IMG/VR virus record: IMGVR_UViG_3300027899_000001
Coordinates: 310,001-374,000 of that record
Direction: 5' to 3' (one strand)
Length of the DNA stretch: 64,000 nucleotides
Positions 36,814 through 38,970 of the stretch are shown here, piece after piece. Made by a program: the position numbers and the translations under genes. Position 1 is the stretch's first letter. Each line of letters starts with the position of its first letter. Below the pieces are notes generated by a model. That model saw only the letters and a program-made list of their open reading frames with translations, made no database searches and had not been told where the DNA came from.

Positions 36814-38517
36814 TTAGATTTCAATCTTGTTGATTTCATCTATGATTACCTGTGGGTTTATTTCAACCTGAGGAATCTTTTCGTAGATGTCTTGACCGTA
36901 GCCGTAAAGACGGAATACTCTGTTTCCACCCTTTATAGGAGCAGTTGCTGCATATCCGCATACGTTGATGATGTATACGTATGGTGTTCCGAACTTCTTG
37001 CAGTATCCTGCATAAGAATTTTCTACATTGCTGTATCCATCCTGTTCGTCAGAGATGATAAGAATTCTATCGTACTGCTTGTTAGTTCTTTCAAACAACT
37101 TGAAGCAAGAACCGAAATCTGTACCGTGACCGCAACATCCGTTGTAGGACATGAACTTCTGCTTTAACGTATTGATTGAATCGATTGGGTTCCAACCTAC
37201 AATCTGTTCAGCAGTAGAAGCGAAATGGTATACATCTCCACCAACACCCTTTGCAAATGTTGCAGCTACAAGTGCAGCCTTGTCAGCTGGCTTCTTATTG
37301 ATAGCCTTCTTAGGGTCACCATTAAGATAAATGCTGGAGTATCCACCTTTCATAGAACCTGATGTATCGAATACAACTGCTGTTCTACCTTCTGGAAGCA
37401 AGTTCTGAAGGTTTGGAATTGACAATTCATATGCTGTTGAAAGTGCCTTTGCAACCTTAGCCAACTGTGTTCCGTTGAATTCAAGTGTCATCACTTCAAG
37501 AGCAATGTCAATCTGGTGTGGCCATACAAGAGACTTACGGATGAATTCCTTTTCAACAAGTAAATCGCACGCCTTGTCAAGAAGAACAGTATCATTGGTC
37601 TTAAGAATGTTACGTACGTTACGAAGTAATGCAAGGTACCCAATCTTCTTAGTTTCAATAAGTTCCTTGTAGTTTTCAGTCTTAGCTTCATTAAGTTCAA
37701 CAGTTGCCTGTTCCTTAGTGATAGTTCCAGCCTTAACCTTTTCAGCTACAACCTTTCCTGCTTCAGTATTCTTATCTTCAACAGTGTTGAACTGCTTAAG
37801 AACGCCAAGAACAAGAGCCTTAAGAGTTGGAAGACCAACATTACCATTTTCAGGTGCATCTAAAAGATATTCATCCTTTTCGAACTTAGTACCCTTAACA
37901 GCCTTCAAGTATTCAGCTTCTGATACAAATACTGTTCCATTTATAGGTGTTTCATGTGGGTGCACTAAGTTAACGATGTCAACAAGGCTTACACCACGTG
38001 ACTTCATCTGGTACTTAGCTAACTGATATGCATCTGCATGTTCAATTGCATCCTTGAATCCCTTCTTAATAGCGTTTGGAATTGGTGCTTCTACACCATT
38101 CTTAGCCTGGTAACATGCAAGAATTTCTGCCATGTCATCAAGACGATAAACGATACCTCCACGATTTTCCTTACGGTCTCTCTTAGAGAAGAATCTCTTA
38201 GCGATTTCAGAACCTGCAAGGTGAGGGATTAATTCTACTGCACCGTAATGAGTAACAGAACGCTGTCCAAATACTGTACGTGCATAGATAAGTGCCTTAG
38301 CTGCGAATAATGCATTCTTCTGCGCAACTCTATTGATAACTTCACGGAATCTCTTTTCACGTTCAGTTTCCTTTTCGTAATAAGTATTATCTAAACCAGT
38401 AGATAAAATACCAATTAATTCATGTTCTGGCTTCTGTGTTAAACCAGTTCCACCCTGTAAAGTTACAGTTTCCTTAACTTCTGGGTTGCTTACTCTCTTT
38501 TCATTGTACTTTGACAT
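36814..38517 (-). CDS. rsr: Ro60/TROVE-domain protein with C-terminal vWA
   Basis: ALIYARTVFGQRS, YQLAKY, YLALLRNVRNI, vWA DTSGSM, GTD, IISDEQ; strong SD AAGGAGG. Confidence 0.9.
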   Translation of the reverse strand: MSKYNEKRVSNPEVKETVTLQGGTGLTQKPEHELIGILSTGLDNTYYEKETEREKRFREVINRVAQKNALFAAKALIYARTVFGQRSVTHYGAVELIPHLAGSEIAKRFFSKRDRKENRGGIVYRLDDMAEILACYQAKNGVEAPIPNAIKKGFKDAIEHADAYQLAKYQMKSRGVSLVDIVNLVHPHETPINGTVFVSEAEYLKAVKGTKFEKDEYLLDAPENGNVGLPTLKALVLGVLKQFNTVEDKNTEAGKVVAEKVKAGTITKEQATVELNEAKTENYKELIETKKIGYLALLRNVRNILKTNDTVLLDKACDLLVEKEFIRKSLVWPHQIDIALEVMTLEFNGTQLAKVAKALSTAYELSIPNLQNLLPEGRTAVVFDTSGSMKGGYSSIYLNGDPKKAINKKPADKAALVAATFAKGVGGDVYHFASTAEQIVGWNPIDSINTLKQKFMSYNGCCGHGTDFGSCFKLFERTNKQYDRILIISDEQDGYSNVENSYAGYCKKFGTPYVYIINVCGYAATAPIKGGNRVFRLYGYGQDIYEKIPQVEINPQVIIDEINKIEI

Positions 38518-38561
38518 AGTGTACCTCCTTTTTTTACTATTAGTTTATACTAAAGAATTAA

Positions 38562-38792
38562 TTAACATATTACTATAAAATGTTTTCTGTTTTCATTATC
38601 TTCACACTTAACAGGCATGAATCTTTTATCTTCATAATCTTCTCTTGCAACTTGCATCCAACCATTTTCGGTTCCTGCTGGATTGTCTCTATTTGCTACC
38701 TCAAGTATTTCTTCATCAGTAGCGTCCCATTCTGCGCAAACTTGCATATAACATATGCCTATCATCGGCTGTGAAACTATTACTCTTTCCAT
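38562..38792 (-). CDS. Hypothetical protein upstream of TROVE gene
   Basis: MQVCA...NPAGTENGW...C. Confidence 0.6.
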   Translation of the reverse strand: MERVIVSQPMIGICYMQVCAEWDATDEEILEVANRDNPAGTENGWMQVAREDYEDKRFMPVKCEDNENRKHFIVIC

Positions 38793-38811
38793 ATTAAATT
38801 TTATTAAAAAT

Positions 38812-38850
38812 AAAAAAGCCTGAGTAATTTTTTACGATTTCTCAGGCTTT
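38812..38850 (-). terminator. Intrinsic terminator between Y RNA and rsr operon
   Basis: AAAGCCTGAG...CTCAGGCTTT plus T-run. Confidence 0.75.
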
Positions 38851-38894
38851 GCAATATAATCATAAAGTTCAAGTTATGAGCTATGCAAATAAAA

Positions 38895-38970
38895 GTTGAG
38901 AAATCTGAGAAGAGTTTAAATTGAAAATTCTAATAAAGATCGTTCGATGTAACTCTTTCTCTTACTACAA
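38895..38970 (-). ncRNA. Short Y-like RNA upstream of rsr
   Basis: TTG-T-AG/CT-CAA, GAGAAAGAGT/ACTCTTCTC, TACATCG motif. Confidence 0.7.

What the first reader, a model, noticed from the sequence alone, without database searches (positions are those of the whole stretch)
36814..38970. Ro60/TROVE gene with a dispersed family of at least seven Y-like RNAs
Seen: intact TROVE-vWA gene with strong SD and visibly higher GC. Elements sharing (C/T)TG-T-AGT(A/G)A ... TAC(T/A)TCG ... TTCTCA(G/A) lie at 25970, 29326, 29601, 38895, 50031 and 50185, with a permuted one at 50969, spread over two tRNA arrays and a dedicated unit. Established: bacterial Rsr-Y RNPs act in RNA decay and repair, are linked to RtcB and tRNA damage, and usually involve one or two Y RNAs. 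Inference: an expanded RNP toolkit for surviving RNA-damaging defences, together with RNase P, Pth2 and the HAD phosphatase.
Basis: partly seen in the sequence, partly recalled or inferred. Interest (0 to 1): 0.8.

Follow-up and report, generated by a model that had tools for sequence, protein, structure and literature searches.

The report
Phage Ro60 with six Y-like RNAs
A 405-kb phage of Bacteroidota carries a Ro60 (TROVE) RNA-binding protein gene and six copies of a previously uncatalogued Y-RNA-like small RNA; all six share one conserved bulged stem, presumably the protein's docking site, but carry different inner domains, one of them a tRNA look-alike.

Summary
The ORF at 36814-38517(-) is a full-length Ro60: Pfam TROVE, a MIDAS motif, and a model whose 13 best PDB matches are all Ro60/Rsr.

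Six minus-strand RNAs (E1, E7, E2, E3, E4, E5) share one architecture:
- a 5'/3' closing stem with a bulged U;
- an internal loop;
- a second, covarying stem;
- an invariant UAC(U/A)UCG;
- a variable inner domain ("cargo") and an A-rich tract.

Across 79 distinct relatives, 88% of cells pair, against 39-54% in shifted controls, with 203 compensatory cells. The "permuted" seventh copy is only a fragment.

All seven protein-selected relatives, and a 634-kb GenBank phage whose TROVE is 34% identical, carry such an RNA just upstream on the same strand. Neighbouring protein genes are not conserved.

Cargo is modular:
- none (E3, E4, E5);
- a permuted tRNA-like T-acceptor-D module as in YrlA (E1);
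- 200-230 nt structured domains of unknown kind (E2, E7);
- in relatives, a domain matching 23S rRNA H69 onward.

Rfam's YrlA and Y_RNA models do not hit any window copy. I read this as a new Y-RNA subfamily. Ro binding and any anti-defence role are untested.

The parts
36814..38517 (-). Ro60/Rsr orthologue (TROVE HEAT-repeat ring plus vWA domain with MIDAS DTSGS), 567 aa
   Evidence: Pfam TROVE E 4.7e-9, above its cut-off. phmmer against PDB hits Thermus phage phiLo Ro60, E 5e-14. AF2 model pLDDT 77. The 13 best Foldseek PDB hits are all Ro60/Rsr, E 5e-15 to 1e-9, over 545-613 columns.
38524..38529 (-). Shine-Dalgarno AGGAGG, six bases before the TROVE ATG
   Evidence: Read directly from the sequence.
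38891..38974 (-). E3: short Y-like RNA without cargo, in its own unit about 380 nt upstream of TROVE
   Evidence: R1 61.7 bits; it was in the training set. The true 3' strand is the second UUUCUCAA, at 38903-38896.
38811..38850 (-). Hairpin plus T-run after E3, a likely intrinsic terminator (10-bp stem, 16-nt loop)
   Evidence: Seen in the sequence. The scanner missed it because the loop exceeds 8 nt. An equivalent hairpin follows the elements in L109 and L070.
50181..50265 (-). E4: short Y-like RNA, ending about 4 nt before tRNA-Gln(CUG)
   Evidence: R1 76 bits; tRNA positions.
50027..50103 (-). E5: short Y-like RNA, directly after tRNA-Gln(CUG) and before a non-canonical tRNA-like RNA
   Evidence: R1 63.7 bits.
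25966..26085 (-). E1: Y-like RNA with a permuted tRNA-like cargo. The order is T arm, acceptor-like hairpin whose loop starts GCCA, then D-like hairpin. It is packed between tRNA-Lys(UUU) and tRNA-Gly(UCC).
   Evidence: R1 41.3 bits, E 2e-6, and not in the training set. RNAalifold on four orthologues finds the closing stems, the acceptor-like hairpin and the D-like hairpin, with compensatory changes. Single-sequence fold z = -3.0.
29598..29829 (-). E7: Y-like stem enclosing a structured cargo of about 170 nt (hairpins with UUCG/GAAA-type loops) of unknown kind
   Evidence: 5' and 3' modules seen by eye and by regex. The MFE fold closes the same bulged stem, z = -2.1. An orthologue lies at L009:19155. 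No Rfam match.
29322..29587 (-). E2: Y-like stem enclosing a cargo of about 205 nt of unknown kind, 16 nt downstream of E7
   Evidence: The MFE fold closes the same stem. The 3' half of the cargo is 83% conserved over 115 nt in L009. No Rfam or E. coli match.
29285..29318 (-). Intrinsic terminator ending the E7-E2 unit
   Evidence: 15-bp stem plus T-run.
50945..51003 (-). A 3'-motif word followed by two GUAGUAA/UUAC hairpins; not an intact element.
   Evidence: No R1 match at E up to 10. No 5' module upstream of tRNA-Cys. Fold no better than shuffles.

Best explanation
The window encodes a phage Ro60 ribonucleoprotein system: one Ro60 protein and six Y-like RNAs of a new sequence class.

Each RNA pairs its 5' and 3' ends into a conserved helix. 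Stem 1 is N-Y-U-G[U]AG on the 5' side against CU-CAR-N on the 3' side, with a bulged U. A UAA/UUU-type internal loop follows, then a covarying stem 2 of about 9 bp. Above stem 2 lies an invariant single-stranded UAC(U/A)UCG on the 5' side and an A-rich run on the 3' side.

Inference: this invariant platform is the Ro60 docking site, and the apical cargo decides what the particle engages.
- Cargo-less forms (E3, E4, E5) expose an A/U-rich loop, as tethers to an exoribonuclease would.
- E1 presents a tRNA-shaped module, like YrlA.
- E2 and E7 present large folded domains of unknown target.

E1, E4 and E5 are cut out of tRNA-array transcripts because they abut tRNAs within 0-5 nt. RNase P and the tRNA 3'-end processing would therefore define their ends (inferred). 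E3 and the E7-E2 pair are stand-alone units with terminators.

Shown here: the protein fold, the RNA secondary structure, and the genomic linkage of RNA and protein. Inferred: binding, processing and biological role.
For: Protein. It has the Ro60 fold over its full length.

RNA structure.
- RNAalifold independently finds stems 1 and 2.
- On 25 short members, 88% of cells pair against 37-52% for slid partners. Twelve pairs show compensatory change, and 0 of 500 shuffles reach the observed score.
- On 79 distinct members, 88% pair against 39-54%. There are 203 compensatory cells against 62 +/- 10 in shuffles. Core pairs switch UA/CG/AU and AU/GC.
- The MFE folds of the two long copies close the same bulged stem.

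Linkage.
- All 7 loci chosen by TROVE similarity (66-80% identity) have a model hit upstream on the same strand.
- The GenBank 634-kb phage LR745206, whose TROVE is 34% identical, has one about 0.6 kb upstream of the TROVE match, E 1.3e-6.
- Of 118 loci fetched by the RNA motif alone, 20 contain a TROVE gene at 30-75% identity. Where the regex found an intact element (10 loci), it always lies 0.2-2.3 kb upstream on the same strand.
- Neighbouring protein genes are not conserved with TROVE.

Bridge to known Y RNAs. In crAss-like phage csAssE-Sib the RNA upstream of the annotated 'Ro sixty-related protein' is hit weakly by both Rfam YrlA (28.5 bits) and my model (25.4 bits). E1 and many relatives carry the T-acceptor-D order that defines YrlA (PMC4201824).
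Against: - No transcript or binding data exist.
- Rfam Y_RNA and YrlA give no hit on any window copy, even at E up to 10.
- The published Ro-contact motif GNCGAAN0-1G is only partly present: UCG is invariant, and CGAA occurs in 4 of the 6 copies.
- Five of the six copies lie 9-12 kb from TROVE, beyond the 4 kb used to call YrlA.
- The 79-sequence alignment was fitted to the model, which favours pairing.
- Loci fetched by the RNA pattern cannot show that every such RNA has a TROVE partner, because most contigs are short.
- The invariant 5' words could also form a local hairpin (GUAGUA with UACUUC), which the data neither support nor exclude.
Confidence: 0.8

Rival explanations
1. The elements are processing or insulator structures of tRNA operons. 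Leader and trailer pair into stems that guide RNase III, RNase E or RNase P, or protect neighbouring tRNAs. On this reading they have no dedicated Ro60 partnership.
For: E1, E4 and E5 sit flush between tRNAs. In csAssE-Sib two elements enclose complete annotated tRNAs. Cargo in many relatives is a whole tRNA body.
Against: E3 and its orthologues are stand-alone units next to TROVE, with no tRNA inside or beside them. Cargo-less members have nothing to process. Invariant unpaired motifs and an invariant bulge point to a protein site rather than a generic helix. The RNA core changes in step with TROVE divergence.
Confidence: 0.1
2. The elements are dispersed DNA repeats spread by mobile elements. 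They could be targets or ends of the homing endonucleases that litter the tRNA arrays, with no RNA-level function.
For: GIY-YIG, DUF559 and NUMOD3 endonuclease-like ORFs lie beside several copies. In L009 an E2-type copy is interrupted by a GIY-YIG-like ORF fragment. The E6 fragment lies next to a PD-(D/E)XK-like ORF.
Against: All copies face the direction of transcription. Helices are kept by compensatory changes, including G-U pairs, which only make sense in RNA. The interiors of the copies are unrelated, so they are not copies of one mobile DNA.
Confidence: 0.04
3. The tRNA-like members are circularly permuted tRNA genes. Their ends would be joined by an RNA ligase and the acceptor loop opened by RNase P and RNase Z, yielding working tRNAs. 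The conserved stem would then be the joining signal.
For: In E1 and many relatives the acceptor-like hairpin loop begins with a discriminator-plus-CCA-like word such as GCCA, ACCA or UCCA, directly after the 3' acceptor strand.
Against: Joining the ends would give a bulged helix of about 19 bp where the anticodon arm should be, with no anticodon loop. Three of the six window copies have no tRNA part at all. No RNA ligase was found among the 56 ORFs scanned.
Confidence: 0.04

Closest known systems
YrlA, the bacterial and phage Y RNA-like tRNA mimic (Rfam RF02553; Chen et al. 2014, PMC4201824)
   Same: It is encoded on the same strand as a Ro60 orthologue. A 5'/3' stem carries a short conserved motif containing CG(A). 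The inner module has T arm, acceptor-like stem-loop and D arm in that permuted order, as in E1 and many relatives. Several copies per locus can occur.
   Different: No window copy reaches any score with RF02553, even at E up to 10. The conserved core here (bulged-U helix, UAC(U/A)UCG, UUUCUCAR) differs from GNCGAAN0-1G plus YUAY. Half of the copies have no tRNA-like module and two carry large unrelated domains. Copies are dispersed over 24 kb inside tRNA arrays, not within 4 kb of Ro60.
Thermus phage phiLo Ro60 with Yrl1 and Yrl2 (PMC12135203; PDB 9KOP, 9L5Y)
   Same: It is the closest solved protein. It is a phage Ro60 with phage-encoded Y-like RNAs just upstream. Those RNAs have a 5'-3' stem flanking an internal loop with a CGAA motif, and they were reported to form complexes with host PNPase.
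   Different: Only about 20% protein identity. phiLo has two RNAs and no tRNA arrays. No cargo diversity was described.
Deinococcus radiodurans Rsr with Yrn1 (the RYPER complex with PNPase)
   Same: Ro60 fold (2NVO, E 3e-12). The Y RNA has a Ro-binding stem plus an effector-binding module. In Yrn1 the tRNA-like part is in the unpermuted order, which is also seen in relatives L093:3785 and L049:7673.
   Different: It is a cellular stress-response system, and its sequence motifs are unrelated.
Metazoan Y RNAs (Rfam RF00019)
   Same: The termini pair into a helix with a conserved single-pyrimidine bulge on the 5' strand, which Ro60 reads, and the apical loop is variable.
   Different: There is no sequence similarity and no Rfam hit. 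The bulge context is UG[U]AG here rather than GU[C]CG.

Membership tests
Ro60 / Rsr protein | TROVE (HEAT-repeat ring) domain | tested here: met
   PF05731 at 36.4 bits against a cut-off of 23. The precomputed Pfam assignment is the same for homologues.
Ro60 / Rsr protein | C-terminal vWA domain with a MIDAS motif (DxSxS) | tested here: met
   DTSGS at residues 384-388, invariant in 33 homologues. A Rossmann-like alternating strand-helix pattern runs from residue 379. vWA structures follow the Ro60 hits in the fold search.
Ro60 / Rsr protein | Full-length structural match to solved Ro60 | tested here: met
   Ranks 1-13 are all Ro60/Rsr, TM 0.39-0.60 over 545-613 columns. The TM values are modest and the model is of medium confidence (pLDDT 77, pTM 0.52).
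Ro60 / Rsr protein | Binds Y RNA and misfolded RNA | not testable with these tools
   Needs biochemistry.
Y RNA (operational class) | 5' and 3' ends form a long helix with a conserved bulged segment | tested here: met
   covariation; single-sequence folds.
Y RNA (operational class) | Encoded next to a Ro60 gene on the same strand | tested here: met
   E3 lies about 380 nt upstream. Seven of 7 protein-selected relatives and LR745206 show the same.
Y RNA (operational class) | Physically bound by Ro60 | not testable with these tools
   RIP, CLIP or EMSA is required.
Y_RNA RF00019 | Score at or above the Rfam gathering threshold | tested here: not met
   No hit at gathering, nor at E up to 10.
YrlA RF02553 | Score at or above the Rfam gathering threshold (69 bits) | tested here: not met
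   No hit at E up to 10 on the window. Positive control: the model does find sub-threshold hits upstream of Ro in Gordonia phage Rabbitrun (31.5 bits) and in csAssE-Sib (28.5 bits).
YrlA RF02553 | GNCGAAN0-1G motif near the 5' end | tested here: inconclusive
   UCG is invariant. CGAA is present in E2, E3, E5 and E7 but not in E1 or E4, and in a minority of relatives. The preceding bases are CU or CA, not GN.
YrlA RF02553 | tRNA-like domain in the order T arm, acceptor-like stem-loop, D arm | tested here: met
   Met for E1 only among the window copies, and for many relatives. The T-arm pairing of E1 is read by eye, because RNAalifold paired that stretch differently.
YrlA RF02553 | Within 4 kb of Ro60 (the criterion used by Chen et al.) | tested here: not met
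   The tRNA-like copy E1 lies 10.7 kb from TROVE. The copy next to TROVE (E3) lacks the tRNA-like domain.

The most novel reading that the evidence does not exclude
Bacteroidota phages use one Ro60 protein with a library of plug-in Y RNAs. One conserved docking stem would carry interchangeable mimics: tRNA in three topologies, the 23S rRNA H69-H71 region, and further unknown folds such as E2 and E7. The particle would thereby be aimed at, or act as a decoy for, different RNA-handling enzymes of the host, including RNA-cleaving defence nucleases. That would make Y RNAs a programmable adaptor system rather than a one-RNA cofactor.
Probability: 0.3. Interest if true: 0.85.

Novelty: new variant of a known kind. 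Interest (0 to 1): 0.7.

Why it matters
What bacterial Ro60-Y RNA particles do remains largely open, and so does the reason Y RNAs mimic tRNA. This family offers a sharply defined, invariant candidate Ro-binding platform joined to naturally swapped inner domains. That is a ready-made experiment on what the inner domain recruits.

The family is abundant in uncultured large phages and crAss-like phages yet invisible to Rfam, so a new model would annotate many 'empty' intergenic regions in tRNA arrays. If the 23S-like and unknown cargos prove functional, RNA mimicry by Y RNAs would extend beyond tRNA. Phage Ro60 would also be linked to ribosome or RNA-defence biology.

Tried and rejected
- Rfam at gathering and at E up to 10, on the whole window, on 25-52 kb, on the E2/E7 unit and on E1 alone, gave only tRNAs and noise.
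- blastn of the TROVE region and of the E2/E7 unit against GenBank phages found nothing.
- E2/E7 against all complete E. coli genomes found nothing, so there is no sign of rRNA mimicry there.
- A conserved 18-mer and a 25-30-mer of the E2 cargo were scanned in viral, metagenome and genome collections. Only this contig and one relative matched, plus two chance hits. The E2/E7 cargo therefore stays unidentified and lacks comparative depth.
- Rfam on the 23S-like relative L005:4140-4450 gave no LSU hit. The similarity was shown by blastn and k-mers instead.
- The covariance model cannot span the 200-nt inserts, so E2 and E7 rest on motif, pairing and MFE evidence.
- My looser regex scanners produced many false positives and were used only as leads.
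- The sigma-70 scan gave nothing above chance near E3 or E7.
- The alternative local hairpin GUAGUA/UACUUC is neither supported nor excluded. Its columns do not vary, except for A-to-G changes that fit both models but are compensated only in the closing-stem model.
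Full report
Origin and setting. The window is part of IMG/VR contig IMGVR_UViG_3300027899_000001, which is 405,016 bp long. It carries 39 ARAGORN tRNA genes, all on the minus strand. Its proteins include type IX secretion sorting domains and a PorP/SprF homologue, which point to a Bacteroidota host. GenBank phages hold no nucleotide relative. The nearest GenBank TROVE protein, at 34% identity, is in the 634-kb uncultured phage LR745206.

The protein. The ORF at 36814-38517(-) is intact at 567 aa and is preceded by AGGAGG. 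It is richer in G+C than its surroundings, about 0.40 against 0.25-0.30. Pfam reports TROVE above threshold. The only significant sequence match in the PDB is the Ro60 of Thermus phage phiLo. An AlphaFold model built on 33 homologues has pLDDT 77. Its 13 best Foldseek PDB matches are all Ro60/Rsr proteins: phiLo, Deinococcus Rsr, Xenopus and human Ro60, over essentially the full length. vWA domains follow. The MIDAS motif DTSGS is invariant in the family. More than 1,200 homologues exist in metagenomes. The gene is therefore a Ro60 orthologue.

The repeats are real. On the minus strand, TGTAGTAA-N10-TACWTCG occurs five times against none expected. A sixth copy with GTAGTGA lies at 29826. Each is followed, 45-235 nt later, by UUCUCAR.

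Reading them together with relatives gives one architecture. Stem 1 pairs the flank and YUG, skips a bulged U, and pairs AG with CU. The Y-R pair covaries: CUG...CAG against UUG...CAA. A UAA/UUU-type internal loop follows. Stem 2 has about 9 bp and a different sequence in every copy. After stem 2 comes the invariant UAC(U/A)UCG, then a variable interior, then an A-rich run, then the 3' strands.

RNAalifold recovers stems 1 and 2 without guidance on 25 short members. With the full structure, 88% of cells pair, against 37-52% when the partners are slid. Twelve of 19 pairs show compensatory change, and no shuffle in 500 reaches the observed covariation. A covariance model built from that alignment finds the three short window copies. 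It also finds E1, which was not in the training set, at 41 bits and E 2e-6.

On 79 distinct family members the core pairs that looked invariant do covary: UA/CG/AU at two positions and AU/GC next to the bulge. There are 203 compensatory cells against 62 in shuffles. That alignment was fitted to the model, so it leans towards pairing.

E2 and E7 have inserts too long for the model. Their minimum-energy folds nevertheless close exactly the same bulged stem.

Link to TROVE. Seven loci retrieved by protein similarity alone (TROVE 66-80% identical) all carry a model hit upstream of the gene on the same strand. LR745206, at 34% identity, has one about 0.6 kb upstream of the TROVE match, E 1.3e-6. 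Conversely, of 118 short loci retrieved by the RNA motif alone, 20 contain a TROVE gene at 30-75% identity. Every TROVE-bearing locus I hold has a model hit upstream on the same strand within 2.4 kb. The protein genes flanking TROVE in the window are not conserved in these loci. The RNA-plus-TROVE pair is thus the conserved unit.

A positive control shows that Rfam's YrlA model works, though below threshold. It hits the RNA upstream of the Ro gene in Gordonia phage Rabbitrun and in the crAss-like phage csAssE-Sib. In csAssE-Sib the same RNA is also hit by my model, which bridges the two families.

Cargo. E3, E4 and E5 have only an A/U-rich loop of 25-35 nt.

E1 has a T-loop arm (UUCGAUU loop), then an 8-bp hairpin whose loop begins GCCA, then a D-like hairpin. 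This T-acceptor-D order is the defining trait of YrlA (PMC4201824). The acceptor-like and D-like hairpins are supported by compensatory changes in four orthologues. The T arm is read by eye.

Relatives show further designs:
- the same permuted design with long variable arms;
- an unpermuted D-anticodon-T design, as in Deinococcus Yrn1;
- whole annotated tRNAs enclosed by the stem, as in csAssE-Sib.

A further class, found in five relatives but not in this contig, starts its cargo with a 23-nt identity to E. coli 23S rRNA at about 1908-1930. That stretch runs from the H69 loop onward. CACGAAUG at about 1961 follows in the same order.

The cargos of E2 and E7 are strings of hairpins with UUCG/GAAA-type loops. 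They match nothing in Rfam, in E. coli or in the scanned collections. One related contig is the exception: part of the E2 cargo is 83% conserved there.

Biogenesis (inferred). E1 fills the gap between tRNA-Lys and tRNA-Gly, and E4 and E5 flank tRNA-Gln, with 0-5 nt to spare. Cleavage by RNase P at the downstream tRNA, and 3'-end processing of the upstream one, would release RNAs whose ends are flush with stem 1. E3 is followed by a hairpin and a T-run. E7-E2 ends in a clear terminator. A motif, AGTTCTTTRA, occurs five times, only on the minus strand. One copy lies 17 nt before E7, and the motif also precedes elements in two relatives, so it is a candidate promoter.

Function. By analogy with Rsr-Yrn1-PNPase and with phiLo Ro60-Yrl-PNPase (PMC12135203), the likeliest mechanism has two parts. 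Ro60 docks on the conserved stem, and the apical domain tethers the particle to a partner enzyme or substrate class. In a genome this rich in tRNAs, and with a HAD_SAK_2 RNA-repair-type phosphatase, tRNA surveillance or repair is plausible. So is hijacking of host exonucleases. Neither is shown. No RtcB, Pnkp, RNA ligase, PNPase, PTH2 or RNase P RNA was found in what I scanned.

Comparison and novelty. Phage Ro60 genes, phage YrlA RNAs and TROVE proteins in some jumbo phages are already known (PMC4201824, PMC7824862, PMC12135203). Four things appear to be new:
- this sequence class of Y-like RNA, which Rfam cannot see;
- its copy number and its dispersal inside tRNA arrays;
- one conserved platform carrying many different cargos;
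- cargos that are not tRNA-like.

Full-text searches found no description of these features. I therefore rate it a new variant of a known kind.

Noticed in passing
L005:4157-4431, L004:7570-7867, L008:2241-2546, L061:8456-8755, L100 (273 nt): A class of the same Y-like RNA whose cargo begins with a 23-nt exact match to E. coli 23S rRNA at about 1908-1930 (H69 loop onward). CACGAAUG at about 1961 follows in the same order. It looks like a mimic of the domain IV junction. This class was not found in the window's own contig.
   Followed up: partly
L136 (GenBank OR575929, phage csAssE-Sib) 3313-3733: Three tandem elements lie directly upstream of the annotated Ro sixty-related protein. Two of them enclose the annotated tRNA-Tyr and tRNA-Lys within the conserved stem. 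The first is hit weakly by both Rfam YrlA and my model.
   Followed up: partly
window 49945-50025 (-): A tRNA-like cloverleaf lies right after E5. It has an insert of about 11 nt between the D arm and the anticodon arm, and its anticodon loop is CUUUGAA (UUG). Both ARAGORN and Rfam miss it. Fold z = -2.7.
   Followed up: partly
window 43926-43999 (-): A tRNA with anticodon CUA, called tRNA-Pyl by ARAGORN. It is a likely amber suppressor, which hints at TAG recoding in part of this phage's genes.
   Followed up: no
window 30737-31951, 33732-34382, 34539-35474 (-): An NAD salvage and synthesis cluster (NAPRTase, isochorismatase/nicotinamidase-like, NAD synthase) lies a few kb downstream of TROVE. 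Gordonia phage Rabbitrun also has a nicotinate ribosyltransferase about 2 kb from its Ro gene.
   Followed up: no
window 29943-30518 (+), 41601-42257, 48563-49366, 50256-50921 (-), 54849-55553 (+): Homing-endonuclease-like ORFs (GIY-YIG/NUMOD3, DUF559/Vsr-like, PD-(D/E)XK-like) are scattered through the RNA-gene arrays. One lies between the E6 fragment and E4.
   Followed up: no
window 13345, 29843, 46780, 50386, 51294 (-): The motif AGTTCTTTRA occurs five times, all on the minus strand, against about 1 expected. One copy is 17 nt before E7 and another lies upstream of tRNA-Cys. The same motif precedes elements in L009 and L109. It is a candidate promoter for RNA operons.
   Followed up: partly
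window 38811-38850 (-); L109, L070: The terminator hairpin after the TROVE-proximal Y-like RNA has a 5' arm (CCUGAGAAAU) complementary to the RNA's 3' strand AUUUCUC. The hairpin resembles a bulge-less copy of stem 1, and the feature is conserved in two divergent relatives.
   Followed up: no
window 8054-10585, 18488-19471, 20558-21421 (-): Phage-encoded proteins carry type IX secretion features (CHU_C, PorP/SprF, Por_Secre_tail). They indicate a Bacteroidota host.
   Followed up: no
window 63340-63810 (-), 960-1652 (-): A HAD_SAK_2 domain protein, of the family found in 'Swiss Army Knife' RNA repair proteins, and a calcineurin-like phosphoesterase. These are the only RNA-repair-flavoured genes found in the window.
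   Followed up: no
L009:19420-19760: The orthologue of E2 seems to be interrupted. A GIY-YIG-like ORF start is followed directly by the conserved 3' half of the E2 cargo and by the 3' stem strand.
   Followed up: no
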